DNA of 64,000 nucleotides from Phallusia mammillata (lineage: Eukaryota): assembly GCA_965637545.1 (NCBI GenBank), contig OZ281495.1, forward strand, positions 12,710,001-12,774,000, read 5' to 3'. Made by a program: the position numbers and the translations under genes. Positions 1 through 64,000 of the stretch are shown piece by piece. The first letter of the stretch is position 1; every line of letters starts with the position of its first letter. Below the pieces are notes generated by a model. It was given only the letters and a program-made list of their open reading frames with translations. It was not told the DNA's origin and ran no database searches.

Positions 1-98
1 TCCGTGCTGCTCTGAGCAGAGCCAAGCCCAGTCATCAATGGCTTGCTTGCATCCTTTAACGGGACTGAAGCCAAAACAGGCTTGTAGCTGTCAGTAAG
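1..98 (-). CDS. RhoGEF shared exon (partial): LTDSYKPVLASVPLKDASKPLMTGLGSAQSST
   Basis: Acceptor tctttgccag| at 98 (phase 0) and second acceptor ctgacag| at 87 (phase 2, same frame); open to the window edge. Confidence 0.65.
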
Positions 99-3000
99 CT
101 GGCAAAGAGTTTGAATTCCTTGTTGTATATGGGAATTCAAACAAGTTTCCCAGATCGGCCCAAAGGTGACCTATTCTATTATAGGAAGAAATATTTTGTT
201 CCGAGCAATTGTATCGTTAACCGTATCGACTGAAAATGATAATCTACATGATTGCAAACAGATTTAAGACTGCCCAACAAACGTTTTCATGATTTTTTTC
301 TCAAAATCAAGTCTTATCTTAGTTCTAATTTGAACGAAAAATAATTGCGCAAGTGCAACTTAACATTTTTTGCAGATAACTTTTTTCAATGCAAACCTTT
401 CGTTAGTGCTCATTTAATTATAGCTATCTTTTGTGGGCTAAATTCAGTAAAAATCTTCACGCAGAGATCAAACAAAAAGTCAATCATCAGATTCCAGCCA
501 CGAACCATAAGATTTTACTGCCAACCGCCATCTTGTCAATACACAGCGCAATAAATGACATCATACTTCAGTCGGGAGTGGATTGCGGGCAAAACCGAAG
601 TCGAGACGTTCCCAGTGGGGCATCAACGTAATATATACGTTGCAAATGTATGTTATCAAACAACCTGGCTTCTGGACTCCCCCACTGCGAACGGCTGTAA
701 TATTGGAATTCGCGACATGCGTTGCAGCATTCTAGGAATTCGGGCCAAAGATAACCGTTACCTTATAAAGTCTGTTACTATGTCAGATGCCTTTGTTTGC
801 GCAAGCTAAACATGTGGCGTTCTAAAATGCTGAAGTCTCAATGCAAACTGTGCCTAAATATGATACATACAGTTTTAGCTGCTGACGCGTTAGTTTGATG
901 CGCCCTCATAGAACAAGATTTACTGCCACATGAGACCAACAAAAGTGTTAAAAATTTACCTTTTTTAGTGCTGAATGCAGAGATCGCATAATTTCGTTAA
1001 CTAAACTGCAACTGAAGAATTTCTTCTTGCCGTTCCTCATAATTTTCCCTCAAACTTCTGCACTAGTCACACCAAACCGCAGCTTGCAAATGAGTAGCAG
1101 ACGTTGCAGCAAAACCAACTTCACGTCGCATCGGAATAAGGAGTTGTTTACCGCCGAAAAGGTTGGTGAAATTGGGACAAAAATAGCCGAAGGGGCGACA
1201 CAACATGCCTGCATGAGCGAACGAATAACCGCGTAATAGATGGACGATGGGTGTTGGGCATCAGACAGCGGCGCGCCGACGACTATTTGGCCAAGGCGAT
1301 CAATTTTGCACCCGGTTACCCGTCTACTACAGGGTCATCGTGCCTTGACGTGTTGATTCGTTGCGATAACCGCCCTCGGCGCAAGTATCGGGGGGTTCGG
1401 AAGGGGATGCGAGTAATTAATTAAAAGACTCGTTGTTATTGTCTAGATATTGGCGCGTGTTGTATGTAACAAGGCCACGCTCATTTGTAACATGACAAGC
1501 TGTGCTCGGTTTTTGGGGATTTCCAGTGGTTAGTGTTGCGCGCTTGGTATTTGATATAATAGTGCTTAAGTCGTATAAGTGCCAGACTCTGCAATCACAT
1601 CCATTTTTTTAATAATTACCGTGCATTGATGATGGCCGTCACGACAAACTAAATGTCAATTCCGCTATGCTGGCATCCGTACAACCGGTTACGATCGACA
1701 GCAGGCGCCAGCCGATGAAACCGATTCGCGGCCAAGAGTTCAAATGCAACAAACCACAAGAGTTATGCATTAGGGTTTGAAAAGTTTTTCAGTCAAACTA
1801 AATGACTCATTTGCCATGTTAGGTTTGTCACAGGAACAGCAGTTGTCGAGCAAACGTTGGTTTGGTGGTTGGCATAAATCGCGTACGTGTGCAAACGCTC
1901 ACGTTACAATGCACGTAAACAACGCGACAAACCAGCACGACCTTATGTTCAATGCATATCAGCTGTCCGTAAGGAAATGTATGCAAATACTACACCGCAT
2001 GTTAAGGTTAGCATTTTAGAGATGCTTGTTGCAGGAATGTACAAAAAAAGCTGTGTGCGTAACCACTGACAGCTTATATGTTTAAGCATGCGCCACTTTT
2101 CTTATTTCACAGCAACTTATATGGCACACGACACGAACAGTAAGAGACAAAAGTTTTCACGGAAATTAAGAAGCTCAGTATCTGACTAAATCTAATACTG
2201 ACTAAGAATAGGTCGTTTTTAGTGGGAACAGATACCAAAGTGGCATATGCCTACTGGCCAACTGACCGAAGTAAATTAGATGAAACTACAAACGAATCTT
2301 TACTTTCACTTCTTTACATTGCTGGTCCATTATAGCCATTCATCAAATCTTAAGTTCATCTTTTACCTGCTGAATTTTCTTCTGTCGAAATACAACCGGC
2401 TGTGTCTTGTACGGTGGCGGGGAAAACGTATACCAAATACTGCTCGAGTTTAATTTATCCGGGTCGCCACCGTTGGCGAGAGATCTAATGAGCGCCTCGG
2501 CTCCGTGGGATCCGCTCCGACCCTTTTTCGAATCCATTCTTCCATGCATTTAATCCAGTGCGCGGGATTACAGGTCCCAGTACGCTATATCACAGTGTAG
2601 TCCTACGCTAATATACAGTGTTCTACAAGTGAAAGCATATCACTGCCTGTTGTACGTTAGTCTGGACTCTGAATCATGTTTCGACCACGCACATCTGTAC
2701 CTGGGTTACACTATGTTGGATAAATCTGGCTTAAGTGTGTCACTTTTCTAATACTGTTACTAATAGTGACAGAGTGAATCCTTTTGGTGATTCAGACGAG
2801 TTCACATTTACCCAGGACGCAAGTGAATTTAACATATTTGACTCGTAGTCCCTATCAAGTATAGTACATTCATTTAGGCTCTATTTGTTTCCAGCAAGTT
2901 GCGTCATTATTAATAACTATCAGTATAGGCTAAAGCAACTTGCTGCATAATTCTAATATCAAGAAAATATCTTATAAATCTTTGTTTCGACAAATTTTTA

Positions 3001-6000
3001 GATTCTAGGCTGAAATACCTTGCTGTTAACGCAATTTTGCTACTCAAGCCTGATCTGTGGCTAAATAACTCATGCTTACCCCAGTATTGGGCAGCAAAAC
3101 ATTGTGATGCACAACAAGCATTGTGTGACCCGAACTGCGCAGTTGTGAGCGTGAGAGCTCGCTTTGAACAGGAAATAGGGGACGTCATCATGGCACGACT
3201 GCATAGAGTCGCTAAATTTTAGTGTGCATCTTTCTCGAGTCATCAAATTGCAATTGTATCCAGCAAGCGCTCAACTGTGCCTTCTGTTACAAGGAAGTTA
3301 GCTGGCTGCAATCTTTTTGACAGGTATAAGATAACGCACCGCGAATTTTTAAAGTGTAGGCAAATATACGACAGACATGTACAGTTAGATTAGAGTGCAA
3401 GGCATAGGCGTGTTATTAGTCAGCGGATGCAAGACCATTGAACGGGCGCTTGTGACGTACCGTCGCCTAAGAGAATTTCTTTTTCTGTTCGCCTACAAGC
3501 TATAGTTTAGGCACACATAGCAATAGGCATCGAAGTAACTTGTCCATTTCAAATCTGTGTTCAAATTCTTAAGTGTGCTTTACATGACTCACTTTAATGA
3601 TAAAAAATCAATCCTCACTAAAACTGATTTACAGACACATGCACTATTGTACTAAAACTTTGCACTGAGAATTCCTAGTGTAACTTTACCCTATTGCCTA
3701 CCTAATGCAATCTCTAACTCTCACACCTCAATAACCTAAAACACGTTTCATGAGATCTTCAACCAAACTGTTTTCGTTGATTCATACCAAATTTGCTACA
3801 AAGCTGACTGTCCGTGCGGATTCTGAACCCGCGTTAGCATTTCGGGTCCTAACAAATCTAAACAGACCACATACAAAGCTTTTGACTCAAACAAAACTTC
3901 TACGTTGTCATCGTGCGGCGACTGAGATTTTCCGTACTGCGGTCACTTCCTATGCCACAATAAACTGCAAAGCACACGCTTTAATCCGCAATCTACGCTG
4001 GGAACAATGCTCTCACAACTGTTCGATCGATTCACGAGAGGGACGACACGCCAGGGACACAATGCTCGCAGTGAATCATAAGACCTTTTGGTGGAGAAAG
4101 CGTCTTGCATTATTTATCATACAACCATCAGCAGGTCAGACGTTTGCAACCTGATGTACTACAAATGTTTTAATGCTGTTTGATTGTAGTATTGCATGAT
4201 TTGGAGGTAAACGTAAGTAAGCAAAATTGTGTTGGTTTGGGAAATAAGTATGTTTTAAGAAACTCCGGGGGGCATTTTACCTAATTTGATTTTGAAAAGT
4301 TGTTACAAGGTGTGAACGGAGAAAGAGTAAAATCCTTGATTGGCAAAAAGACTGCTTTTCCAGTAACATATTGCACCCTTTTTTGAAATGTTTGGGAAGT
4401 TGAATTTGTCATAAGATGAGTAACTTCGTTTTTTTGGGCAAGGAAGTTATTTTTGCTGTGATCGGAGTTGGAAGTGCTTTTGTTGGTGTAGATAGTATTC
4501 ATTCGTTAATTGCTTTAATAAATAGCGGCTATCAATACCTTGCAACAACGTCCGCTTCTCATTAACTCAGCCATGCGCGCTGTTCGAGCCTCTCAATATT
4601 TCTGCACTATTTTAAGTAGTTACTGGCGCGTCTTTGTAATGTAAGCGTGCTTAATCCACAAATACTGTAGGCGCTAGGCCTAGGGAATATTTGTGAAATT
4701 TTCTCCACATTGCGCCAACTTCTTCAAGGTTTAAACCAGGACAGCTGCATGGCAAAGGCCGGAAGGAAGGTGGTTCCGCTGAAACAAACGCTAATTGCAA
4801 GTGTTGAATTGTTTCCGATTACCTCTGCCATGCAAAGTACGACAAACATGGCAGCAAGCGGAAGTTCTGACATCACCATGACCATTGTTGTTGTGTTTTG
4901 TAATAAAAGTGATTTTCGAACGCATTTTTGATAACAGTGTTTTCTCATGGCTGATAATTTTTTTCAATGCTGAAACTTTATACGTGGTAAAAAACTAAAA
5001 AACTTGTTGTACTAACCTTGAAGTTCTTTTTGCCGTTTGCTTCTTTTGAGTCAGAAGTCGAATCGTACGAGTCTAAAGAACAAAGCAAAACATTTAGATC
5101 AAAGTTAAAAACACACACCCACATTTGCACTTTAAACAATAAACAGTGTTCGCAACTATACCTGTTCATAGGATATGAAATTTTGACACCTGCTTTAACA
5201 GTACTTAAGTTAATGAATTATTAAATACACCCAAAAATCCTGCAATAAAAAGACACAGTTTTACTGCCATCTGCCGGACAAGACAATGCTGCATTTACGA
5301 AATACACATTAACCACAATAAAATTCTTGTCTCGCAGCAAAAATAAATTGGTGTAGTAAGTAGAGAAATGTTTTATACCAAGGCGAGCACCACCTCAAGC
5401 ATCAGTTAACCAATTAACCATGGCGCCATGTTTTCGCGCCATGCAGAAGCTAATCTTGCAATCCCACTTGGCGAACAAAGACAACACGTGAGAATTAAGG
5501 GATTTTGTTATTGTCCTCTTCAGAAGGAACAATGCACAGACTACTGTTGCTGTTTTGCACAAAAACGAAACCAGAGTCGTGGGAAAGGCTGTGGGAACAG
5601 GATTGGATACCGAATGGATTTTGACTGTCCAAACGTAACTTTTGTTTATGACTGATTGCTGTTCATCTTGATCTAAATGAGAGCGCAAAGTGAAACCCTG
5701 GGAGTTAACACTAATAACAGAGTCTAAAGATAACCTTTGGGGTCACTTTGTTACTTTATAAAGCTTTAAACGCAATTTATAAAGTACCCCCAAACGCCAT
5801 TTTTTAAAAAGTTTCTTTTGTTGGTAAAATGCCACATTGCATTTCATTTACATTCAGACGAATGAAAAAACAACAACACTCCGAATAAAGCAATACAACA
5901 CATCTCGCTTTTAGGTAAGCCATGCTAAAGTTAATGTGAAAACGCCTACGGAAAACTGTTCATTGTCTGATCACATGATCCATCGAAACCAACCAAGCAT

Positions 6001-9000
6001 GTCAAACAATGGGTGTGACGTTTCTCCTAGCGTTGGAATACAATTGAATTTTCCCAGTGAAAAATGCGATCACCTACAGCAAAATACTACTAATTTTAGA
6101 CGACCTTCTACTAAACGCTGTGACTCATTCTCACAAGACTAAGGACGACCAGACTGCTGGCACCTTGCTAGTTTCAACTTTCAAGGTCCTTCAGGTATAG
6201 GTTGTTGCGATTTCCATGGGTTCAATTCTTCACTTACGTTGCAACAAGTTGCAAGTAAATAACACGTATCACAAACAATAAGTTTTTAGTTTCGGCAAAA
6301 ATGACTCAAATATACAAATCGATCTAAGTCTAAGAACACAAAATCCTATTGACCACAAAAACACGCGAATCCTTCAGAAATCATACACCTGATGTTTTTC
6401 TCACAACATTCGGCTGTCCGCCCACTGCCTATCCCGTCTGACTAACAAAACCACCACTTGGCTGTCCTTCAAAAGCGAACGACCTCCCAGGTGTGTGGGA
6501 ACGACGTTGACACACAAGGGGCAAAACACACATGTTACAGGAGATCCGCATTTAGAGCAAAATAGACCTTACGTGTTCTTCGAGGTTTTCGAGGCATCTA
6601 ATGGCTGTCGAGTATCTTTCAGTATCCACAAGTGCTGGTGCAATCGCCTTGATGTGTTTATGATCCAAGTACTGCTCGTTAAGCCACTGAGAGTTCGACT
6701 TGCGCAGTTTACGGCCAACAAAGCGACTTCAATGGGTTGAACTAAACCGGCGTACACAGATGCAATACCGCAGAAGTAATAGACGCAACGATTCAAAGAA
6801 CATTCGTGCCAAGCAACTGCCAAACATCTTAATAAGCTTTCTTCATTGCCTTTTGCTTTCACGAGGATCGTGGCCAATCGAATGCAACTCGACGCGTATT
6901 AGATGCACTAACATTTCACGTTGGAAGTAGCGCGCATTCTCGACCCAATGCAAATCACACATAACCTTAGCAGAACTCGCCACAGTGGGTTGTTAGACAA
7001 CCTTTCTCAACGCGCCCCTTTGCCTTCAGTAAGACACTAACAGAAATGAATCCTGGTTGGAAAGAAAACGCCTTTTGTGGAGCGACAGAGGAAAGGATGG
7101 AAACCTAAACAAATTCACTATGTCGTACAGTGCATCACGTGACGTAGGTACGACGTCAGTACCAAGGAGGACTGTAAATTCCTAACGTTTCAAAAATTGA
7201 TGTTTTTTGTATGAACCTATTTCGTTCCCATAAAGATTACTTTAATGACAATTGATTTTTGTTGCGTTCCTAGACGCATTCTATCGTATTGCCTTCTTTG
7301 TCCAGCCCAATGAAATAGAATGTTAAACTTATGTCCAATACTGTCTTTAAGGCACAATTTAATATTCCAATGAACCAAAGAAGCAACAATAGTAAATCTA
7401 GTTCAATCCTGAGCTGTGCATAACTAATTCAAACTGCAACCGAATAGGACAGAGCAATCTGTGCCCTTCACAACGACACACTAAAGAAGCTTGCTTCACA
7501 ATGTTGCAACAGACAACCGCTCAAACCACAGCAACGCTCATAAAGAACATCGCACTGACGCTCTGCACCAAGACCGTGTTCGCACTTGGGCGACAAGTGC
7601 CAGCGAAAATATGCGGAGTGGAGTGACGAGAGTTTGCTGGCTCGACGAGTCTTGCGGTGTTGACATGAGGGCAACTCAACAAACATCAGAGTTGCCCAGT
7701 AACCTGAACTGTTTGGTGACCAGACAACGTAAAAGCACTGACCAGTTGTACTGCGTGGGCTTACAGTGCGTTTCTGAAGAGAGTTCTAAGTAATCATGGG
7801 GATTTTAAGGCAAAGCTAATGTTGATTCAGCGGACACAAACAGATATTGTGTACAGTGAAACGCAAACACTTCATAGAAGCTGCACAATGCGCCTGTCGG
7901 TGACTGCTGGGAAATACCAGCGCCTAACCATAAAAAACACCGCTTGATTTGATGTGCAAAGCAAAACGTACTTACATTTCGGAGAGTATTTCACCACAAA
8001 ACCACCCGAGACAAACATTTTGTCAGCACCAGCAGAAAGAACTCTTCCTTAAAAACCAGCATCGACTCTGTACCCATACCAAGACTAACTGAATACTGTT
8101 TTGCGCCTGAATAGACTCGTTCAAAGATCTCGCACGCGATTCAAAAACACGTCAAGCAGCGTACTTGAACGTTCGACGTGATCCGGGCATTAATCCGACG
8201 ATAATCGTGCGACCTGGGGGTGGCCACATCAAGAGGCAACTCCATGTTATCGCTGTTGTAAAAACACGCGCCAGCACAACAGGGTCAAGTGGGTGGTGTT
8301 ACGGAATAGGCGAAATTTTTAGATGGGAAGATACAAAGGCAGGTCGGCCGAGGGCTACGAAATCCATGCGTTTCTTCTCAATGTACAAAGGTTTATTATA
8401 ATGAAGTATGAAATGTGGGAAGATTCATCACCAAGATGGATTTCAAATTTGGATTTAACAACACTTTAAAAAACACTATAAGAGTTATGGTTACTCCGTA
8501 CCATGTTTAGTTAGAAACGACATCGGTTTTACTGTTTTTTGGCAAACACCTACATAAAACCAAAGTGCCTTAATTCATAACCAAGGTTGCTGGGCAACAC
8601 AAAACTAGACAGTGCACAAACATATCATTCACCAATGACTTTATGATTATGCCGCACAAACAGCCAGGCAGCCCAATAGTGAGTTACGCAATTGACATTA
8701 GGCGTGGCTGGCACAGGGTTGACCACATTTAACGAGCCGAAAGTTAGTGCTGGTGGGAGCTGGTGTGAAGCCCGAAATCATGTGATCAAGGGTCTTAGTT
8801 GGGCCGTTGGGACCTTTGCAAGGCAAGTTGTAAATACCAAAGGGTTCTTATGAGAGAAATAACATGCATTAGGTTGCTGAAGGTCGAAGAACTGGAACGG
8901 TACTGGTAAAAGATCACCAAAGGTCACCATGTTCTTTTATGTAGTTCTTTGAACCTCAGGTATTATTTTTATTCTACAACTGAATTACATATGTTTCATA

Positions 9001-12000
9001 TGAACAGGTCCGTAGTGCTGTTCATATTATTTATATACAAGATATAATTGTGCTAACAACGCAAATACATGATGAAAGTTACATAAAACACATATAGAGG
9101 GTCATTTCGAATTATAACTCAATCTACTTAGCGTCACAGACAAACTGTCTTTGTTCATTACATACAAATAATCAACTCCTCAAAAAACATAACCTCAGTC
9201 CAAACAATTGCGTTCAAGATTTTGTTTACACTTGGCCTTGAAACAACATGCCGCTGTCCGTAACCTTGCTATCAATACACATTACACCACCTCCCTGAAA
9301 CTCAATGCAAATGCACTTGTCTCCCTGACACAGGTCTCTCATATGAGCCACACAAATGAGGCACAGTGCCATTATAACACAGCAAAACGCATCACCGGAA
9401 AGCCATCGAAACAGCAACAAGGGGCCGAACCTGCCATGTGAACTTCAAAGCGGTGTAAGTCGCATGCCTTATGGCAGATCGCAATTCCCTGTGACTGTTG
9501 GCGCAGGTTAAGGGAAGCCCCTAAGAACTACGGTACACGGCTTTCTCAGCAGACTCAAGACGCCTACTGCACCAGGCCGTGCAATCACTTTGCAGTTACG
9601 GCGGGTATATTCAGGCCTGTTTCTTATCCAACATTCTTGTTAAAAAGAGTGTTCCGGTTATGCTATTGCATTTCTATGTTTTATTCTACTAAGTAACAAC
9701 TAGTGTTGACTGCCACAATTCACAACTTGTTTGCCAAAACAGCACTAGATATAACACATCTAAAGAAACATTAGGTCCTGAAAACCCTACTACCCAAACT
9801 ATTGACCCTTATAGTACAGCACAGACATCTCTTGATCAACCCTGTAGCCTTCAATTCCTTCGGGTGCCCAGGGCCGTGCAGCAATGCTCGGCGTCATTTT
9901 TGGGAGCGCAAGTTGCCGAGCCGGTTATCGCATCTGTCTGCTAACGAGGGAACAGTCAAACACATTACGTCAGCCCGTCAAACACATTACGTCAGCGCGA
10001 ACTGCCAATGTACGCCAGGGCAAGGTTCGAAATGGAATAATGATTGAAAGTCGATCGGGGGAAAACCGTTCAGGTCAGAGCAATCCTCTATGTTGTTTCA
10101 CATAAAAAAAAAGTTACTGAAACTCTGGGTCTGGAATCCTAACAATAAAATTCCACAGAAATATTCCCCTTCAACAAACATTACATTTCTTTTGCGGTTG
10201 CTGTTAGGTGTAAAATGCCAGTTATACAATATTGATAACACATGTTAAGCTCTCTTTCCACACAACGTGATTTGTGCTTGTTCCTAACTGACGAATGTAC
10301 GTACATACGTATTTCTAACTGTATTATCACCAACAACCAGCTTACTACAAATTGTGGTAACTGAGGCGAAAGCAAATAATCCACCACAAGGCTTCGACAA
10401 AAACACAATGAGGTGCAGACAGGCATTCTAATTTCGACAAAGCAGTGACAGCGGCGCGTGCGTGGATACCAGTTCTAAGTGCGTCCAGAACAATGCCTTA
10501 CTCGAACTCTTGCGACCTTTCGGCTACCTCACGGTCGTCAACAACTCGCCGGAGACTTTGCCGCTCACAGCACGTCAACACAAGAATTGGTTGCACGGTC
10601 CACTTCGCATATGACTGTTTTTCCCCAACAAAGCATGTGTAATAAACAAACTAAATTCGGTATTGTCGATGCACTTGGCATAATAAATAAAGATTTCAGG
10701 ATTTCTGTGACTTTTAAAACGCAATGCTATGTTAAAGTTAATGTTGCAATTTTTGCCGTAAACGTAGACACAACTAGATCACAATGCTTGTCACCAGTAA
10801 CAGACCGAGAAATTCAAGAACGACTAAACAAGGCTGAATTACAAACAGTCAGCAATAGCAAATCTTCTTCAGGCGCGTTAACCACAAACTTGTGCGTACA
10901 CACAACTAAAAACCAACTGCTAAAAAGTCGCCAATGCCGCTGTAGCGACCGTGTCAATATTTACCAAAATCGAGGAGGCGGTCGTTTATTGGGGAAAAAA
11001 TCAATTTAAGAAGCGCACGACAAGTCGTATTTTGTGCAGGCTTCCTAAAGCAAACAAACTTGAAAAGCTAGTGCGGTGGAAAGTACGTCGTAATAAGGAT
11101 GTTGACTTGTCGTTATGAAAACTAGATCTGTGGCAATCGGACGATGAACTAATATGATGAAGGCCAAAGTGATTAATACCCATGTAGGAGTCAACTTAAA
11201 TGAGTTTCTTACACAGTTAAATGATAATGTTAAGAATGGAAATTAGCAGTCCAAATGTTGTGTTGTGGCAAATTGATGTTGTACCAGATACTGTATTCGA
11301 AACATTTGATGACTTTAATGTACTGAAAGCAGTGTTTCATACCGGAACGGAACGGAACGTTATACCGGAACGAAATAAATATTTTTTGGCTCAAATACCG
11401 GAACGAAATACCGAAATAAAAAATATTCAAAATACCGGAACGGAACGAAATACCGTTAAATTTTATTCCGGTATTTCGTTCTGGACATTTGACATGATAC
11501 AATTGCTCAAACATTTTGCGCCGTTAGGCTATAATAAAAATTGAAGCTCCTGCAATTTACATCTGTTTGACCATCATTGACAAATGTTATGTGACGTAAC
11601 AACTATCGACAGTAATTATTGTGTGTTGCAACTTTCTTCCTTTTTTCGCTTAATAGTTGCAAAGACCACAAAGAAATGTTCGTTTGTTAAGACCGAAATA
11701 CCGAAAAATACCGTTATAAATTTATTTCGGTCAGACCGGAACGAAATGAAAATATCGGTCCAGAACGAAATACCGAAATAAATAATTTGCTCAGAACGAA
11801 TAACGTTATTTGGTTTCGTTCCGTTCCGGTATGAAACACTGACTGAAAGTACATTTTATTCACCCATGTTTAATTATAAAAATAAATAAATAAGAAAACA
11901 GTTAAGACCAACTATTAGTCGCGAAAACTTTCAATACATATTACATATCATCCTAAAACTGGAAAGGCACAAAACATGGTGCCGAGAAAATGCCGATATC

Positions 12001-33000: not shown

Positions 33001-36000
33001 GTGATAAAGAAGTTAATTAGCGGTTAAGGGGTTCAGATTTCCAAGAATAAAGCTGTTTATTCGAAATTGCTTTTGTTGACCACGGTAATAACAATAGCGA
33101 TCGATCCTTCAAACGTCGATAATAGTATACACACACAATAATTGGTTTTGTAGTTTTCATGTTAAGATAATTTGTGTTAATTAGTTGGCTGCATTGAAAT
33201 TTTCACAATCTACATTTTAGTCAAGTAAAACAGAGGTATAACCAAACGTAAAAAGGTCTCTTTACCAAACAACTTACGTAATGTACCCATCGATTATTTA
33301 TTAAATCACGCTCCTGAAAAACTTAATAGCCATTGGCAAGAGTACCAGAATAGCCCGGTAACCGATAAGTGAGAATATCACCATCAACGAAATCGCACAA
33401 CAGTATACGGAAGCATGACAAATGTAAAAATAAAACACTTTCGACACACAAGTAAGAGGGGCTATTTTTAAGTACTGCGCTTTGCTACTATTTCGCTTTT
33501 CTAAACAGTTTTAAGCAGACAAAATACTTAATCTTCTTTAACTGTGCGTTTGCTTACTTAAATTTTGTACGATCAACCACGGTCCGACATACATATGTTT
33601 TAAAGACACACCTTGATTCGTTGTTGGTGACACATGAAGCGAAAAACATTCCGAAGTCCGACAACACGAAGGTATACACACAAACGCCTGGTTTGTGAAA
33701 ACTTTTCATTAGTGCAACTAATCCATCGATAATCGCTTAAACAATGGCAACTCCAAATAAAGCAGAGTTGCATCAATTAAGGGGTTGCGGTACACATTTT
33801 TTTTTCTTCATTTCAGTTCATTGCCTCACCATGTATTGGTAATTGTCTATATAGTGCAATGAACCTATTTTATGGAACTATCCCTCAACCACCTAATTGT
33901 TAATTATTTCCGAACAGCAAACATACTTAAAAATGTGCTTAAGAAGCCATTTTGGGTTCATAATTGTGCAAATTATCCTCGAAACATCATGTGAAACTTT
34001 CAACTAGTGCGAACTAGTCACTGGATCAAATCGTTTGAATACAAATTTAGACAACTCTAATCAATCAAGCACGCCCCAGGCATACGGCAAAACCAAACTG
34101 ATGTAGATAACTGGACAAAAATCAATCGGAACTCTCTCGGTCAAACAATATTGCTTAGTGAAGACACAGATATACTCCACTGGCTGTATCTCACAATAGC
34201 GTGAAGCGGCTAGCAAGTTTTAGCAGCTGCGCACGACAAATGATTTCCTCGCTTGCGTTATGCTGGGCCTAGCCAGCGGAAAACAATACTTCGGGGATGG
34301 ACGAGCGACCTCAACACGGCGGGAACCGCAACTGCCCACAATAAATCAGCGATCCGGCCATTGTGAAGCGCTAATAAAGTATGGTCCAGTGGCTTGGAAG
34401 TGCACAGTACACTGGTAGCCTATGTTGTGTATTGATATGAGGAAGTATGCAACTATATAGTGGATGGGAATTGACTGCATAGGTACCTTAAACGCAGTTC
34501 AGTTGTTAAAACATTTTTATGCTTTCGAGGCATCGTGTTTTAACGAAAATGTAGACTACAAACAGGGAAAAAACTGTAGTCATTTAGTGGTGTTTGCACA
34601 ACCTGGCCTCGTGCAAAAGGAAACGACATAACCTATCGTGCCATGTGTTCGTTGTTTAACCAAGCGTCCCGCACCTTAATATAATATACACTATACATGA
34701 TTATCGAGGAAACGACAATGGGGCAACGCATGGCACTCTGAACGCACAACCAATGTTTGAAAATCACATCCAAAAATGTAAACACAAATCAAACTCTTTC
34801 ATGAATTGCCCAAAACCACAAGAGCAAAACTAACACTTAACCTGAATTTCTTTAAATTTGAAACCTCATTTTCTTTTATTCATTCTGTCAACAAACGTAC
34901 ATGATATATTCACCGCACCTTGAAACCGAAAAAAGTCTGCTATCCTAACCAGCCTATCACGTATCCCAGCTAAATCACATTACCAGCTAAATCAAGCACA
35001 CCTCAGGCAAACGAAAAAAAATACGCAACAACAACGTCATTAACCAAACACCAAAAAAACACCACAGCACTGAAATAGCGGTGTGCGTCAATCGTAGATG
35101 TAGCATATGTTCGCCTTGGGGGCTGCAATACAGTGATATTAGGCCTTCAAAGGTCCGACGACAACGCTGTGTAGTTTTTGTGCGTGCCTTGTCGTTTGTT
35201 TAGTTTACACTAGCTGTGAAAGGTGTGTCTGATCAAGGAATTACGTCCACTATAGTTCACGCACTTATCGTACATGTTTGAGGGTTTGATATTGCGTTTC
35301 TTACCAGTTATAGTTTAGATTTAAGCAGGGTTGGTAATTGGGCATGGAGTAAAATTTATGCCAATTTTTTTTCAGTTCAAACGTCCGCTGTCAACTATTT
35401 AATAACGTTTCTCGAAATGCTGTTTTAAAATAAATATATTTCAAGTCAAAATGCATGTTATGTATATGGTTACTTTATCCTTACCCAAAATAGAAATGTT
35501 TGCCCTAACCCGTTACACTATGACATCATGGAAAATGCGATTGTAAGGGGTATATTTTTACCGAAAAAAACGTGGAACATTCCTTTGAAATCATCTTAGG
35601 GCAGGGGTTCTTAACCAGGGGTGCGTGTACCCCTTGGGGGTACGAAGCATCAAAGCAGGGGGTACGACATGCAGTGTGAAATTATATGCTATTTAGGCAT
35701 GTTTGTGAACAATGCGTGTTAAGTTACTATGTTATAAATCTTTGACGTGTGCTGTAAATATTGTTCAACTTACAAGACTGTTTTAATACATGCATTCAAC
35801 ATGTAAGATATAAATACAGTGAGTTTAATTCCTATTATTACAATTTTATTTACTTCCGTCGACCATTGTAGAGAGGGGTACGAGATACTTTTATGAAAGC
35901 TCTGAGGGTACGAGCTCTAAAAAGGTTAAGAAACACTGTCTTAGGGCGACCAACGCAACGCCAATTACAGTATAGCCAAAATAGAGCATATTTACCGCTG

Positions 36001-39000
36001 TAAATAGTTTAATCGATAACCAATATAAGATCTTTGGAATATTGACAAATACTTTACCACAGGCACTGGACACCGTAACTTGTTGTCACACGATATCACT
36101 AACAAGTTTTACAAAAGATGTATTTATCAAGCTTATGTTTTGGTAGTTGCATGCAGAAGCTTTGTGAGATGTAAAGCTGATCAATTAAAAATTAAATTCC
36201 CGCCAAAAACAGGACCTAAAAATTTAGAGCTTTGAGTAAATTTAAGTGATGAATATGCGATACTTGATAGAAAAGGAAATTACCTTGATTAGGAAGTGCG
36301 CCAAATTAACTAAATATTGATAAAACTTACTTAAGCTATACAATAGTAGTTGAAAATGGTAAGGTTGTATATTTTCAATAACATTTCCATGACAAAACCT
36401 TGCCGTGTCTAAATTAACCTTGACCTTGTGCAATTTACGTAATAGTTCAGTAACTGTAGAATGCTCTCAAACAAAACGTTTACATAAATGCCTTCCAAAA
36501 GAGTCCAACACACAACAGAACAGGAAAAACGTAAACGCTTAAACATAGTATGGTGGACATAAAAAGACAAGCCACTATCGTTTAAATTCAATTCGACGAA
36601 GTATCCCGTTTGCCATTTATATATTAGCCAAATAAATCGCTACCATTGTGTTGAAACTAATGACCTACTGGTGTCACCACTTCCACAATTATATTCCTAC
36701 ATTGAACCGGTAAAATACTGGTAAACATAGGACACAACGCAAAATCGAATTTGCTGTTACGTCATTCATTGCATCCAAACGTGTGACGCATAAATCCCCG
36801 ACCTCTGGAGCTAATTTGACGTTTATTAGCAATTATTGTGCAGCTCAGCGCGGAAATTTCACAATTTGTGCATTTAACCTAACGGAAAAATGTCCTTACC
36901 TGTCACCGACTGCAGGAACACGTCAGCAAGAAGCGTTTGTCGATAAAATCGTCGCGGACAAAAACGATAAAAAGTGGTTGCCATCTAAAACAAATCTAGA
37001 CAAATATACTGCGGTTGAAAAGGCAAAAGTGAAAACCTTTTGTTAAGGCGGACAGCTCAACGCAACCTCAAAAACACGTATCCTTCAAAAAAGTTGCACA
37101 TTACACAACTTGGTACACCGCTTTAGCATGCAGTGCTTAACCATAAAATCCCTATAGCATTATCTTAACCCTAAAATGAACCACTGCATTGTGTGCCGTG
37201 TTTAAACTGTTACCAGCATCCATTATACTTAAACGCACAAATAATGTCAAGGCCAGCTTGAAGGGCAGGCTTGTGCCTTTTGTTTCCTGAGGAATAACTA
37301 CAGTCAGCAATGTCAAACACCCCAAGGTATAACAACCTTTCGCTACCCCTTCGTACGTGCAGGCTTGAGCTATAAGATGGACAACGCGCAAACCAAAACT
37401 AACAACAAAAAACAGACACTAAATGTATAGTGATTACTGAATATGTTTTATTTGCTAAACCACATTTTAAACGGAACTAGCTATCCGTTAATAACGCTTA
37501 TCCACATTTTAGAAAATGTCAACCAAAAAGGAACAATCCATCAGGGGGGCAATTTTCGCTTCACACATTGAAATACAAACAGTCTTCCTATGGTAAACAA
37601 CAACCTAATGTCTGACATATGTGCATATTGCTTAAGGCCAACATCAATTCTTATCAGACAAAAGACAAACAGGTTAGACGCGACAAGCCCTTCTGGTGAT
37701 CCGCATCATATTGTGTATTACCTCGTTATATGAGGAAAACGGCTGACACGGTTTGTTGACTTGTGTTCGTGTACAAGGTGTGCTGTCGGGGCGGGTGTTG
37801 AACATTACAGGCTACATTGTTTGTGGCGGGAGTGTACACTGAATTAAGATTACTTGCCAAGAATGAGAATGCAAATATAATGAAAGAGTATAAAGGACTT
37901 GAACAGGTTAACATGCCACATTACCGTATTGGACGACTGAAAAGTTAAAAATAAAGAAACCGATAATAAAACAACACGTTTAAACATGCAGTATTGAGGG
38001 GCATGCCTCCTGTAACAATAAAGTTATAATAAGTCTGTTTTATTAGAGCTTAATACGACACTGGTGTTTCTTTAATGAAAGTGTATATAAAAGGGGGTTA
38101 CTGCCAAACTTTAGCAGTGTCCTCATATCACTGATGGTGGCATCAGTGTTTGGCGCAATGCTTGAACAGTAAAGCATGCCGCTTTTTACGTCGGGCTGTT
38201 ATATTCCTCTATTACTATTACTTTTCAACACAAATGTTCTTTTCTCCTTTTCTTTAGTCAGGGGTATCCACTATCAAAACTTTAACACTAGTTCAAAAGT
38301 ACCCACGAAACTAACTTAACACGCGATCAGGGAACAAGGGAAGGGTGTGAATCATCAAATGCGGTTTTAAGATTCCAGTGGGATATCCCGAAGGTGCGTT
38401 CACGCGGCTGTAAAGATTGTTTACACGTCAATGTGTCGCAACAACACAATGTACCTTGAAATCCTGTGTGATTTTAAACTGGTTGAAAAGATACTAAACG
38501 TGTTGCGCATATACCACACGAAATTTCAAAGATGTTTTAGAAATGTGTGTAAAAATATTCTTGCAAAAAAAGACAACCCTGCCAATATCAAACAATATTA
38601 AAGTTAAATTTTGGTTGTCATCCACTGCCATGCATAACATATTCAACGCAACCCTTTTTAAACTAAAAGCATTTAAACCACGTGCATCAAGCGAAAATTC
38701 TGACCTGAAAAGTTAGTCACCATAGATCAAGGTAAATAGAAAGCCATCAGTCAGTCTTCCGTACCCACGCGCATGGGGTTATTTAAACCACAAACCATTG
38801 TTGCTAAAAATAGAAACTGCAGACAATAGGGGTCGACACTGGGTTGTATCAGATAACGAACAATGGTAGGTGGAATTTGCGTTTGTGGAGAACAAGCAGT
38901 CAGAAAAAGATCTTCGGCGTTGCTTTAGACACGTTTTTTTCAAAGAAAACTTATTCTTTGAAATACAAGATGCTCCTTTTTATGAGAATGTGAACCTTGA

Positions 39001-42000
39001 AGCCTGACTCAACATCATTGTAATCAGACCAACAGACAACAAACCTTTTTTTGTAGGAGCATGGAACTCCAAACCAGCGTTCAACCTTACGGTTTTAGAA
39101 GGTTGCTCATTATAAAGTTTAAAGAAATTGCGTAACAGTAAACATTACCGACTCGCAATAAGGTTAAGAGAAGATCATCAAGCAGCAAAAGAAAATATCA
39201 GATTTGGTTTCACAGTCAAAATAGTGAAATCAAGTGTCCCTTGCGACAAAAAGTTTGCTCATAAATAACAGAGCCAGCAACGAAGTGCATAGATCAACAT
39301 ATAAAAATATCCTTGAAAAAGTGAAAAGAAACACACGTACCGTCTTCCTCCTGAAGTGAGTGTCCATTTCCGTACCTCAATTCCGCCAAACTTTTAGCTT
39401 TTGCCTAAAAAGTATAATTTTGGTAAACAATTGGTGATAAAAATTCCTCTTACATATTTGATAGTGATTTACGGAACATTTAACTGATTTTAATAACGTC
39501 GGGATAGACTGAGGTTAGATAAATTATCCAAAAACCTTTAGTTCGACATATAATGTATATTAAATTTTCATTTGAAGATACATAATGTGCAGAATCCTTA
39601 CTTTTTTGTCAGGTCTCACTCCTCGAGCGCTGCTTCGCATTCGTTCCAGGAAGCTCAATTTGCGGGTGACCAACTTCTTGGCATGACCCAACTCGGGTTT
39701 GGGAGGTACTGGGGGAGGTAACGGGGCTGTGGTGGGGCGTTTGTCCCCAAAATTGCTGGGACTAACAATAGAACAGAACTTCGTCGTTAGAGTGTTATTT
39801 TAAAAGCTAGAATAGTGATTTTAAGTTTTTACGTTGCATGCTTGGATGGCTAAAGCCTCATGCCATTTTTTTAATTAAAAATAGATGAATTTATGAACGT
39901 GATGTAAAATGGTCTTACAATAACGGAAAAGATATAGTAGAGATCGTTGATTTAACATAGCACATACACCACAGTAACATCCACGTGACTTAAAACTGTG
40001 CACTAAACTCTAGGACCTGTCATGTCGTTCAACGCAACTTACCGTATTTAAAACCAAAAAAAAAAATCAAATTAACAGAACACAGACTGAAAACTTTGAC
40101 AAGTCTGAAGTCGTCCACCGTTTTATTAGACATATATATTTCACCTAAGTAATACTTGCATACGATTTTTAGCGCTGTTTTGTTTTTAGATACTGACGAT
40201 GCCTATTACTTAGGTGAAATATATATGTCTAATAAAACGGTGGACGACTTCAGACTTGTCAAAGTTTTCAGTCTGTTATTACATGCGACTGTTGTCTCCA
40301 TCTGTCGTACTGAGTCTCTGGTGACTCGTGATTTATAATATACTACACACAGTTTATAACAGAACACAACAAGGAAACTAAAAAATCATGCAAAAAGTAA
40401 AACAGCAATCATGCGTGCAAAATTGCTTAGCCATGCGTGACGGTCAAGGATGCGCACGTGACTCACTCTGCGAGAAACTCGGTGAGTGAGAGCTGTGCGG
40501 ATGACGTATTCGCCTCACTGCTGCCGTCTGGCGGATCACCACTTGTTAAGCTAAAGCGGCAAAACATGCATGGAATTGAATAATCAGTGCGTTAATTGAA
40601 CTACCCGAAATGTTAGACTCAATCAAAAGAAATGATGCGTATGACAGCATGACGTGTATATGATTGAATGAATCAAAACGTCATAAGATATAAAGACTGC
40701 TGATGAAAATGACTGAACTTTTGTTATTAGAATTAACTAGGCATGGTTTTATAAGATGTATTTAACATTGAGTTGATCACGTGACATATCAGGAGCCTCT
40801 TGGTTACGTAACCACCACTAGAAATTACATTTGGTAGGCTAACCTAGACCAAATCGAATTTTGGCTGTTCGTTTTTTGTCGATGTGGTTTAGTGTCAATC
40901 ATTTTGGCTCACAACATATTTGGAATTGGTTGGATTTGTAGCTAATAATTGATTACACGAAATAAAAACACGAATTTTTTACAAAATCTTTTGAATTAAT
41001 TTTAATCAATTCAAGAGCAGGGATTCATCAACTGTCAGTTAGTTAAATAGTGTATGATTTATTGGTGAAATAATGATGGATAATAATTTTAAGAACGAAA
41101 TTTGTGAGCAAAACATCGATGTTCGTTTTGTGTTGCATGGTGCACGTTGACGTCAATGCAGTTGGAAATTTGATTGATCACATGCTGGTGATGTTAATGT
41201 GCAAAGGTTGCGGTCGGCGCCATAATTGTAACACCAATTTCAAAAATTTAGGTAGCCGACCACAAACTTGACGTTTTATGTGCTAGTTAAATCAATGTTA
41301 ATCACATCGGGCCAACAACGCCCGAATCCCCGCGGATGACTACAAATTTCGCCGGGGTTAATTAATTTAAAATCTAAAGGGGTGTGAGCTTACAAGGGCT
41401 GGCTGTTGATTCGACGCTGCAGTGCCAGCAACGACTCTCGGTGATCGCTGTGTGAAAAAGAATTACTGCAAATGCCGGTTCAGTTTTTTTTTCAATACTT
41501 CTGTTTTGAATAATTTGCAAACCTTTCTTTAAGGGAATATTAGCATGGGCATAAATAGAAGCTTGATTTAAACCAAACTTGCCAGTGAGCTTGTTTATAA
41601 TGTCAAATGAGTACGAACCAGGCTTTATACCAAAGCTTGTTATTACGTATGTACTAAAATGTATGCACTACAAACAAGCGTTGTGCAAAGTTTGTAATCA
41701 ATATTGGGTTTAATAGTTAAAGGTCGTAACGTTGAGAAAATCAACTAACGTAAGAACTAACATCAGACAAAGTTTACTAAACACCGATAGGTGGCGCAAA
41801 GAGCTCTGGGAAATATTTAAAAGGGAAGTCCTGTAAAATGCTAACGATAAGGGAGATTAGGGTCAGGGTTAGGTTTTTCTAGTATAGCATTAAAAATTAT
41901 GAACACTCGTATCCCTGTTTAATTGCTAGTTTATATAACAGTGCTCTTTACGCCACCTGTCGACTTATTGCAAACTTTGTCGAATGTGAGCTCTTATGTT

Positions 42001-58880: not shown

Positions 58881-58970
58881 TTACGAAGCCCCGTTGGCAT
58901 TGAAAGCGGCATTTAGCGCTTGCTCAAGTGCTTGTTTGATGCCGGATTTCGTCGCACTTACTTTCACCAC
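58881..58970 (-). CDS. VWF-like terminal exon (VVKVSATK...ANGAS*)
   Basis: atttgcag| acceptor; TAA stop at 58883-58881; followed by an AATAAA. Confidence 0.75.
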   Translation of the reverse strand: MVKVSATKSGIKQALEQALNAAFNANGAS

Positions 58971-63939: not shown

Positions 63940-64000
63940 CTAAAAACGTAAGTAAAACAATTTTGGACTTACATTTAGATCATTTCAGAAAATTTGTCTC

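What the first reader, a model, noticed from the sequence alone, without database searches (positions are those of the whole stretch)
1..39340. Array of alternative first exons giving variable N-termini on a shared RhoGEF core
About 39 kb of the RhoGEF lies in two huge introns (39340-18911 and 18791-99) in a gene whose other introns are 0.2-2.6 kb. They contain repeated GC-richer patches with ATG-open frame-GT donor units. Candidates upstream of exon 18910 (38798, 36984, 21149) end in phase 1, and candidates downstream of it (10426, 8245, 2549, 1040) end in phase 0, each matching the next shared exon. This would be a variable-first-exon system like plectin or UGT1, producing short GEF isoforms without the N-terminal domain and the RRHSW site and with different targeting peptides. 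Caveat: I screened partly by phase, so selection bias is real, and mismatching candidates exist (37805-37722, 18222-18017).
Basis: partly seen in the sequence, partly recalled or inferred. Interest (0 to 1): 0.7.

Follow-up and report, generated by a model that had tools for sequence, protein, structure and literature searches.

The report
Nested alternative first exons, ascidian RhoGEF
This sea-squirt RhoGEF gene does have alternative first exons inside its large intron, but only two of the seven proposed ones hold up, the "shared" exons were mis-called, and the same layout is already annotated in related ascidians, so it is ordinary multi-promoter biology.

Summary
The window is Phallusia mammillata. 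Residues 1-736 of its 1839-aa ARHGEF18/28-like protein (P0009) map to the minus strand at 100% identity.

**Supported candidates (2 of 7)**
- 21149-20180: spliced RNA contigs from four runs in three studies cover 20180 to 21201-21268 and join 20180 to 5072. The exon encodes the N-terminus of annotated short isoforms in Clavelina and Ciona.
- 2549-2367: it is the ortholog of an annotated third first exon in both relatives, at the syntenic position (BLASTP 2e-5 and 8e-5; 0 of 2000 shuffles reach the score).

**Not supported**
- 38798, 36984, 10426, 8245 and 1040 have no support. ATG-open-frame-GTA units occur at chance density (284 sense, 240 antisense, 280±22 in shuffles), and their phases are uniform.

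**Verdict**
- This is a conserved gene with three promoters in the window; relatives have a fourth.
- The leaders are unrelated to each other, as in plectin, not paralogous as in UGT1A.
- The DH-PH core lies outside the window.
- The observation and the interpretation are each partly right; novelty and interest are low.

The parts
39341..57202 (-). Promoter-1 (long isoform) block: 21 coding exons, from 57202-57176 to 39404-39341, encoding P0009 aa 1-717. This part carries the ARHGEF28-like N-terminal domain. The last exon ends in phase 1 (GAC G|GTACGT).
   Evidence: Exact 6-mer and tblastn mapping of P0009 at 100% identity; sequence read.
45320..45334 (-). RRHSW motif (P0009 aa 504-508), found only in the long isoform.
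   Evidence: tblastn. The motif is conserved in Clavelina P0006 (RRHSWHSSESL) and Ciona P0008.
5073..39340 (-). Single 34.3-kb intron of the long isoform. It contains the promoter-2 first exon.
   Evidence: P0009 aa 717/718 join 39341 to 5072.
20180..21268 (-). Alternative first exon 2. RNA contigs start at 21201-21268. The ATG is at 21149, followed by 970 coding nt (323 aa, Ser-rich, mostly disordered). The donor is ATCA|GTAAGT, the last exon base is 20180, and the exon ends in phase 1.
   Evidence: Spliced RNA contigs in X1, X2, X5 and X11. phmmer hits to P0002 (1e-56) and P0001 (3e-64). Alignment A2 shows a conserved start Met. AlphaFold mean pLDDT is 49.5.
5017..5072 (-). Shared 56-nt exon (NSYDSTSDSKEANGKKNFK in the short isoform), with acceptor ttctttag| and donor CAAG|GTTAGT, going from phase 1 to phase 0. 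Promoter-1 and promoter-2 transcripts both use it.
   Evidence: The loose end of the RNA contigs at 20180 matches 5043-5072 exactly. P0009 aa 718-736 map here. Sequence read.
2367..2549 (-). Alternative first exon 3. The ATG is at 2549, or at 2537 (MDSKK...) as in Clavelina. It encodes 61 or 57 aa, has donor CAG|GTAAAA and ends in phase 0. It is expected to join the RPSIIRPQS exon, which lies beyond the window start.
   Evidence: BLASTP 2e-5 to aa 1-51 of Clavelina P0056 and 8e-5 to aa 20-53 of Ciona X3 P0064. It is the best tblastn hit of both peptides in the whole window, and 0 of 2000 shuffles reach its score. Its position is syntenic. Alignment A1.
18792..18910 (-). Not supported.
   Evidence: Absent from P0009. 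The only RNA is two low-depth X1 contigs, 18682-18840 and 18821-18988, which cross both proposed splice sites unspliced. Its phase (1 to 0) cannot be combined with exon 5072.
1..98 (-). Not supported.
   Evidence: After aa 736, P0009 continues RPSIIRPQS..., which is nowhere in the window. There is no similarity to the Clavelina or Ciona loci.
960..1040 (-). Candidate 1040 (27 aa, phase 0). It is frame-compatible with the next shared exon, but unsupported.
   Evidence: It is not similar to the fourth first exons of Clavelina or Ciona. No RNA was laid on it.
8165..8245 (-). Candidate 8245 (phase 0). Out of frame with the true next exon 5072, which needs phase 1.
10346..10426 (-). Candidate 10426 (phase 0). 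Out of frame with exon 5072, and not conserved.
36900..36984 (-). Candidate 36984 (phase 1). Frame-compatible with exon 5072, but with no conservation and no counterpart among the relatives' isoforms.
38765..38798 (-). Candidate 38798 (11 codons, phase 1). Unsupported.

Best explanation
The window holds the 5' two-fifths of the Phallusia mammillata Lbc-type RhoGEF gene (named ARHGEF18-like or ARHGEF28-like), on the minus strand. The gene uses nested alternative promoters, each with its own first coding exon. The first exons are unrelated to one another. Promoter 1 (first coding exon at 57.2 kb) gives the 1839-aa long isoform. Its 21 specific exons encode the ARHGEF28-like N-terminal domain and the RRHSW site. 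Promoter 2 lies inside the 34-kb intron and starts a transcript near 21.27 kb. Its single 1.09-kb first exon encodes a 323-aa, largely disordered, Ser-rich leader that appears restricted to tunicates. Promoter-1 and promoter-2 exons both end in phase 1 and both splice to the 56-nt exon 5072-5017. Promoter 3 lies in the next intron. Its first exon (2549/2537-2367, phase 0) encodes a 57-61-aa leader and skips straight to the first core exon (RPSIIRPQS...), just outside the window. Relatives have a fourth short first exon 140-240 nt upstream of that core exon, so the Phallusia copy is probably off-window. All isoforms share the DH-PH_16-coiled-coil core. The leaders would change regulation or localisation, not catalysis. 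What is shown: the exon chain of the long isoform, the 20180-to-5072 junction in RNA, and the orthology and synteny of exons 2 and 3. What is inferred: that each first exon has its own transcription start, that exon 3 is used in Phallusia, and any functional difference between isoforms.
For: P0009 aa 1-736 map at 100% identity, with 39341 joined to 5072. Its DH (876-1060) and PH_16 (1089-1201) domains lie off-window. RNA-type contigs from 4 runs in 3 studies cover only 20180 to 21201/21255/21268. They include 5.4-5.5-kb contigs that end there with no extra letters, and at 20180 they run on into letters identical to 5043-5072. phmmer of the ORF against 1.84 billion representative proteins gives 4 hits, all starting with Met at the same aligned place. 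One is Clavelina P0002, a 1350-aa RhoGEF whose aa 15-328 are this exon. Ciona and Clavelina both have annotated long, big-exon, e3-type and e4-type isoforms. The genomic order is the same in both: long-last exon, big exon, small shared exon, e3, e4, core exon. The window shows that order as far as e3. Candidate 2549 is homologous to e3. The leader is mostly disordered.
Against: Contigs cannot prove a transcription start. The X11 contig ends at 21268, directly after ...ttcgtatAG, so the 5' end could be a splice or trans-splice acceptor. No Phallusia RNA was laid on 1-6000, so use of exon 3 in this species rests on orthology alone. The runs are only guessed to be RNA by their records, although the spliced junction shows cDNA. 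Isoforms in the relatives are mostly computational RefSeq or annotation models.
Confidence: 0.8

Rival explanations
1. Seven or more alternative first exons form an array. The upstream ones splice to exon 18910-18792 and the downstream ones to exon 98-1.
For: The units exist with the stated phases. Two of them turned out to be real first exons.
Against: The two acceptor exons are not in P0009. 18910-18792 is seen only unspliced and at low depth. The big exon splices to 5072, not to 18910. ATG-ORF-GTA units occur at chance density with uniform phases. Five candidates have no conservation and no counterpart among the relatives' isoforms.
Confidence: 0.03
2. The 5' end of the short (big-exon) mRNA is made by spliced-leader trans-splicing, or by cis-splicing from an unseen non-coding exon, at the AG at 21270-21269. 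It would not be a transcription start at about 21.27 kb, so the promoter lies further upstream or is even shared with promoter 1.
For: The longest contig (X11) begins at 21268, exactly after ctcttcgtatAG. SL trans-splicing is common in ascidians (established knowledge, not tested here).
Against: No contig carries extra leader letters at its 5' end. The other three contigs end at 21255, 21255 and 21201, as expected from coverage fading towards a true end. An AG before a given base is expected 1 time in 16 by chance.
Confidence: 0.15
3. The big ORF 21149-20180 is an internal cassette exon of the long isoform and not a first exon.
For: The frame stays open for 25 codons upstream of the ATG. Its phase-1 end equals that of exon 39341, so inclusion would need only a phase-1 acceptor.
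Against: P0009 skips it. RNA contigs at about 18-40x depth end within 120 nt upstream of the ATG, with no loose ends. The only phase-1 AGs upstream lack a pyrimidine tract. All five homologues start with Met at the aligned position. The long isoforms of Clavelina and Ciona also lack it.
Confidence: 0.03
4. The 2549 ORF is a conserved relic that is no longer used as a first exon in Phallusia.
For: No Phallusia RNA was examined over it, and no Phallusia protein record carries it.
Against: The frame is intact, the Met aligns with the Clavelina start, the SIWY.FSP.PYK motif is kept, and a CAG|GTAAAA donor sits at the orthologous exon end in the right phase. Neutral sequence would not keep this at the roughly 40-50% protein identity seen between these genera.
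Confidence: 0.08

Closest known systems
Orthologous loci in Ciona intestinalis (LOC100175494; isoforms named ARHGEF28-like, AKAP13-like and ARHGEF18-like) and Clavelina lepadiformis (ARHGEF28-like X1-X6; CAK8677311-17)
   Same: The same long isoform, the same about 330-aa big first exon, the same small shared exon, and the same e3 first exon. The genomic order is the same, and the exons converge on the RPSIIRPQS core exon.
   Different: The Phallusia introns are about 2.5 times larger (15.1 kb against 5.8-8.2 kb between the big exon and the small exon). The fourth first exon (M...SPR[KR]D..LRKK) was not found in the window. The Phallusia short isoforms are absent from the protein collections searched.
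Vertebrate Lbc-subfamily RhoGEFs (ARHGEF2/GEF-H1, ARHGEF18/p114RhoGEF, ARHGEF28/p190RhoGEF, AKAP13/AKAP-Lbc)
   Same: A DH plus PH_16 core followed by a coiled coil. There are several isoforms with different N-termini: the GEF-H1 review PMC8583009 names these four as closest relatives and reports at least 3 GEF-H1 isoforms. From my own knowledge, AKAP13 has the AKAP-Lbc, Brx and Lbc isoforms.
   Different: No C1 domain is detected in P0009. The 323-aa leader has no detectable relative outside the 4 hits, apparently all tunicate.
Plectin-type alternative first exons (unrelated first exons on a common body)
   Same: Mutually exclusive first coding exons that are unrelated in sequence, each in frame with a common downstream exon.
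   Different: Far fewer exons are supported here (3 in the window, 4 to 5 in relatives). No evidence on tissue or targeting specificity was obtained.
UGT1A or clustered-protocadherin variable exon arrays
   Same: Several first exons splice to constant exons.
   Different: Those arrays are tandem paralogous exons. Here the leaders are not similar to each other (E=0.17) and no repeats were found.

Membership tests
Lbc-type RhoGEF (ARHGEF2/18/28/AKAP13 subfamily) | DH (PF00621) immediately followed by a PH_16-type PH domain (PF17838) | tested here: met
   P0009: DH 876-1060 (1.8e-26) and PH_16 1089-1201 (5e-17). P0002 has the same pair. Both domains are encoded outside the window.
Lbc-type RhoGEF (ARHGEF2/18/28/AKAP13 subfamily) | C1 zinc finger upstream of the DH domain (present in ARHGEF2, ARHGEF28 and AKAP13, absent in p114/ARHGEF18) | tested here: not met
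   No PF00130 hit in P0009 at E<=0.01, whereas the non-tunicate relative P0011 has one. On this feature the protein resembles ARHGEF18.
Lbc-type RhoGEF (ARHGEF2/18/28/AKAP13 subfamily) | ARHGEF28/AKAP13-like N-terminal domain in the long isoform | tested here: inconclusive
   The N-terminal exons (56.3-53.3 kb) match the C1-containing relative P0011 only weakly (1e-5 to 0.03). There is no Pfam model for them. The source names of the orthologs say ARHGEF28-like.
Multi-promoter gene with alternative first coding exons (plectin type) | Two or more mutually exclusive first exons, each with its own ATG | tested here: met
   Promoter 1 is given by P0009 and promoter 2 by RNA contigs. Promoter 3 is given by orthology to annotated first exons.
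Multi-promoter gene with alternative first coding exons (plectin type) | Each first exon is spliced in frame to a common downstream exon | tested here: met
   39341 to 5072 (P0009) and 20180 to 5072 (RNA) are shown. For exon 3 the join to the off-window core exon is inferred from its phase and from Clavelina and Ciona.
Multi-promoter gene with alternative first coding exons (plectin type) | Each first exon has its own transcription start or promoter | not testable with these tools
   Only contigs were available, and they cannot show a start. CAGE or 5'-RACE is needed.
Tandem paralogous variable-exon array (UGT1A / protocadherin type) | The variable first exons are homologous to each other | tested here: not met
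   BLASTP of leader 2 against leader 3 gives E=0.17. No direct repeats of 60 nt or more occur in 1-39400.

The most novel reading that the evidence does not exclude
The short isoform's 5' end at 21268, just after an AG, may be a spliced-leader trans-splice site inside the 34-kb intron. In that case N-terminal diversity in this ascidian RhoGEF would come at least partly from alternative trans-splicing of a longer primary transcript and not from independent internal promoters. Separately, Phallusia might own extra lineage-specific first exons, such as 1040 or 36984, beyond the conserved ones.
Probability: 0.12. Interest if true: 0.45.

Novelty: new member of a known kind. Interest (0 to 1): 0.22.

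Why it matters
The result corrects the gene model. There is one 34-kb intron, a missed 56-nt shared exon, and two false exons. It also adds two short isoforms (about 1445 and about 1160 aa by exon arithmetic, not assembled here) that the searched protein collections lack for Phallusia. The multi-promoter layout of this RhoGEF is kept across Phallusia, Ciona and Clavelina. This points to distinct, selected roles for the leaders, for example in regulating RhoA during ascidian morphogenesis. As biology it is ordinary: alternative promoters in Lbc-family RhoGEFs are well known.

Tried and rejected
- **CpG profile.** A CpG observed/expected profile was tried as a marker of internal promoters. The window is not CpG-depleted (median 0.95) and real and false candidates do not differ.
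- **Pfam on intronic ORFs.** Scans of 20 intronic and exonic ORFs gave no hit reaching a curated cut-off (best E 0.039-0.15), and no transposon domains.
- **Repeats.** A repeat search on 1-39400 found none.
- **RNA genes.** Rfam and tRNA scans were run to explain the RNA contigs at 18.7-19.0 kb. Both found nothing.
- **Clavelina protein against the window.** tblastn of P0002 finds only the big exon, because the small exons are too diverged.
- **Unbiased tblastx.** Window 1-39400 against the Clavelina and Ciona loci finds only the big exon.
- **Search for the fourth first exon.** tblastn with the Clavelina and Ciona e4 peptides gives nothing above noise in the window.
- **Other tunicate contigs.** L003 and L005 do not reach the downstream exons within 10 kb. 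L005 does show a long-isoform exon 4.6 kb upstream of its big exon.
- **Failed look-up.** P0007 is not on record in the contig index, so P0062 was used instead.
- **Literature.** Two searches found no paper on this ascidian gene.
- All exon searches were made exon by exon, by reference.
Full report
**What is at the coordinates**

Apart from the 61-codon one (2549), their peptides look random. The exception in length is 21149: an ATG, 970 nt of open frame, and a near-consensus donor ATCA|GTAAGT with last exon base 20180, in phase 1.

As a class the units are chance.
- On the sense strand of 99-39340 there are 284 ATG..GTA units of at least 10 codons.
- The antisense strand has 240, and Markov shuffles give 280 +/- 22.
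- Phases split 96/98/90.

**Identity of the gene and the true exon chain**

phmmer of the 352-aa ORF against 1.84 billion representative proteins gave four hits. One is Clavelina lepadiformis P0002, a 1350-aa protein with DH and PH_16 domains, whose residues 15-328 are this exon.

A word search with P0002 then found Phallusia mammillata P0009 ('Rho guanine nucleotide exchange factor 18-like', 1839 aa). P0009 residues 1-736 map to the minus strand of the window at 100% identity, in 22 exons. So the window is P. mammillata.

The chain runs from 57202-57176 down to 39404-39341 and then directly to 5072-5017. That is a 56-nt exon with acceptor ttctttag| and donor CAAG|GTTAGT, going from phase 1 to phase 0. 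The next residues, RPSIIRPQS..., are nowhere in the window. The DH (876-1060) and PH (1089-1201) domains are encoded beyond coordinate 1.

The long isoform has a single 34.3-kb intron (39340-5073), not two huge introns.

**RNA evidence**

One search for runs, made with 18700-21300, returned runs holding 30-48% of its words. That is the share expected if they hold only the exonic part. I laid four runs from three studies on 17000-22999.
- In all four, a contig at 18-40x depth covers 20180 up to 21201, 21255, 21255 or 21268.
- Each contig stops exactly at 20180 and runs on into 30 letters that match 5043-5072 perfectly.
- This is a spliced 20180-to-5072 junction, which also shows that the runs are cDNA.
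- Two of the contigs are 5.4-5.5 kb long, and the exon lies at their very end with no extra letters. No loose end is reported on the upstream side in any run.

So the mRNA appears to begin within about 120 nt upstream of the ATG at 21149. Contigs cannot prove a start.

The X11 contig begins right after ...ttcgtatAG, so a spliced-leader or cis acceptor cannot be excluded. I give that reading about 15%.

Candidate 18222-18017 has zero depth in all four runs. The stretch around 18910-18792 is covered only by two low-depth X1 contigs (18682-18840 and 18821-18988), which pass unspliced through both proposed splice sites.

**Relatives carry the same layout**

Cluster look-ups show full isoform sets in two ascidians.

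| Isoform type | Ciona LOC100175494 | Clavelina |
|---|---|---|
| Big-exon start | X1, X2 (1448, 1392 aa) | P0002 |
| e3-type leader | X3: MEEKK...RRRKGQ\|RPSII | P0056: MDSKK...RRRKGE\|RPSII |
| e4-type leader | X4, X5: MPHGNS...LRKK\|RPSII | P0053: MEMYSH...LRKK\|RPSII |
| Start at internal Met-Met | X6, X7 | P0051 |
| Long isoforms | 1752-1808 aa | 1742-1834 aa |

Mapping these N-termini onto the fetched loci gives the same order in both species.

| Element | Clavelina L001 | Ciona L002 | Window (minus strand) |
|---|---|---|---|
| Last long-specific exon | 3616-3684 | 5246-5308 | 39404-39341 |
| Big first exon | 10001-10981 | 10001-11032 | 21268/21149-20180 |
| Small shared exon | about 16732-16776 | 19260-19322 | 5072-5017 |
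| e3 | 18399-18557 | 20421-20576 | 2549-2367 |
| e4 | 20523-20609 | 22297-22377 | not found |
| Core exon (RPSII...) | 20750-20806 | 22616-22675 | off-window |

**Candidate 2549 is the ortholog of e3**
- BLASTP of its 61 aa gives 2e-5 against residues 1-51 of P0056. The window's fifth residue, a Met, aligns with the Clavelina start (MDSKK).
- BLASTP gives 8e-5 against residues 20-53 of Ciona X3.
- Both e3 peptides have their best tblastn hit in the whole window, on either strand, at 2537/2534-2376/2370 (3.8e-5 and 1e-3). The next best hits are at 0.4-0.8.
- None of 2000 shuffles reaches the observed Smith-Waterman scores.
- Alignment A1 shows the shared SIW(Y).(F/L)(S/T)P.P(Y/F)(K/R) motif and a basic tail.
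- The donor CAG|GTAAAA is at the orthologous exon end, in phase 0. That is the phase the core exon needs after exon 5072-5017.

No Phallusia RNA was laid here, so use of the exon in this species is inferred.

**The other candidates**
- 1040 is not similar to the e4 peptides. Its score is below the shuffle mean, while the Ciona and Clavelina e4 peptides score 51 against each other. In both relatives e4 sits 140-240 nt upstream of the core exon, so the Phallusia copy is probably off-window.
- 10426 and 8245 end in phase 0, but the true next exon (5072) needs phase 1.
- 38798 and 36984 are frame-compatible with 5072, yet they have no conservation and no counterpart among the relatives' isoforms.
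- Unbiased tblastx of 1-39400 against both loci finds only the big exon.

**Nature of the leaders**

The six big-exon homologues align from a common start Met to a common end, (T/S)LPR followed by a short variable, mostly basic tail. Conserved islands include TWS(W/L)R, LSR(N/Q).S, a Pro/Ser-rich patch and (T/N)WD...(T/S)LPR, the last reading TWDGRNA(M/V)TLPR in five of the six. AlphaFold with this shallow alignment gives mean pLDDT 49.5 and pTM 0.17, with one helix at 261-280. This fits a largely disordered regulatory leader.

Leaders 2 and 3 are not related to each other (E=0.17), and the region has no repeats. The resemblance is therefore to plectin-type unrelated first exons, not to UGT1A-type or protocadherin-type paralogous arrays.

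**Comparison with what is known**

The core is an Lbc-subfamily RhoGEF, DH plus PH_16 with no detectable C1. The GEF-H1 review PMC8583009 lists AKAP13, ARHGEF18 and ARHGEF28 as GEF-H1's closest relatives and notes several GEF-H1 isoforms. Alternative promoters in AKAP13 are my own recollection. I found no paper on the ascidian gene.

Exons were searched singly, by reference.

**Verdict**

This is a real but ordinary multi-promoter gene. Two of seven candidates are supported. The layout is conserved and already annotated in related ascidians.

Noticed in passing
window 18682-18988: Two low-depth (4-6x) contigs in run X1 only cover this 307-nt stretch contiguously and at 100% identity. The rest of the 15-kb intron has no coverage. 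Rfam and tRNA scans find nothing here. This could be pre-mRNA debris, a small unannotated RNA or a rare retained piece.
   Followed up: partly
window 21268-21270: The longest RNA contig (X11, 5492 nt) begins at 21268, immediately after ctcttcgtatAG. This might be a spliced-leader trans-splice acceptor and not a transcription start. A TATTTAT motif lies about 40 nt upstream (21313-21307).
   Followed up: partly
window 13542-14126 (+) and 10479-11009 (+): Two antisense ORFs of 194 and 176 aa lie in GC-richer patches of the big intron. They have no Pfam hit. The Clavelina locus also has a called antisense ORF (L001 14315-14965) in the corresponding intron. Homology between them was not tested directly, and tblastx found nothing.
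   Followed up: partly
window 58881-64000 (-): The upstream neighbour is a Cys-rich, VWF-like or cystine-knot protein gene, seen as ORFs such as 59880-60098, 61842-62087 and 63530-63724. An earlier first-reader note (s1-385341) covers 58881-59741.
   Followed up: no
window 20180-21149 (-): The 323-aa leader has only 4 relatives at E<=1e-3 among 1.84 billion representative proteins. One is from Clavelina and three are from unnamed environmental or ENA contigs, so the module appears tunicate-restricted. It keeps several short conserved motifs.
   Followed up: partly
window 20669 and 21225: The RNA contigs differ from the window at 20669 (C>T on the + strand, in 3 of 4 runs) and at 21225 (A>G, in X11). 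These are probably polymorphisms between individuals.
   Followed up: no
L005 12818-13667: In the unnamed tunicate contig carrying P0003, ORFs with FAM200/ZBED5-like and GTF2IRD2-like (domesticated transposase) Pfam hits lie 1.8 kb downstream of the big exon, inside the corresponding intron.
   Followed up: no
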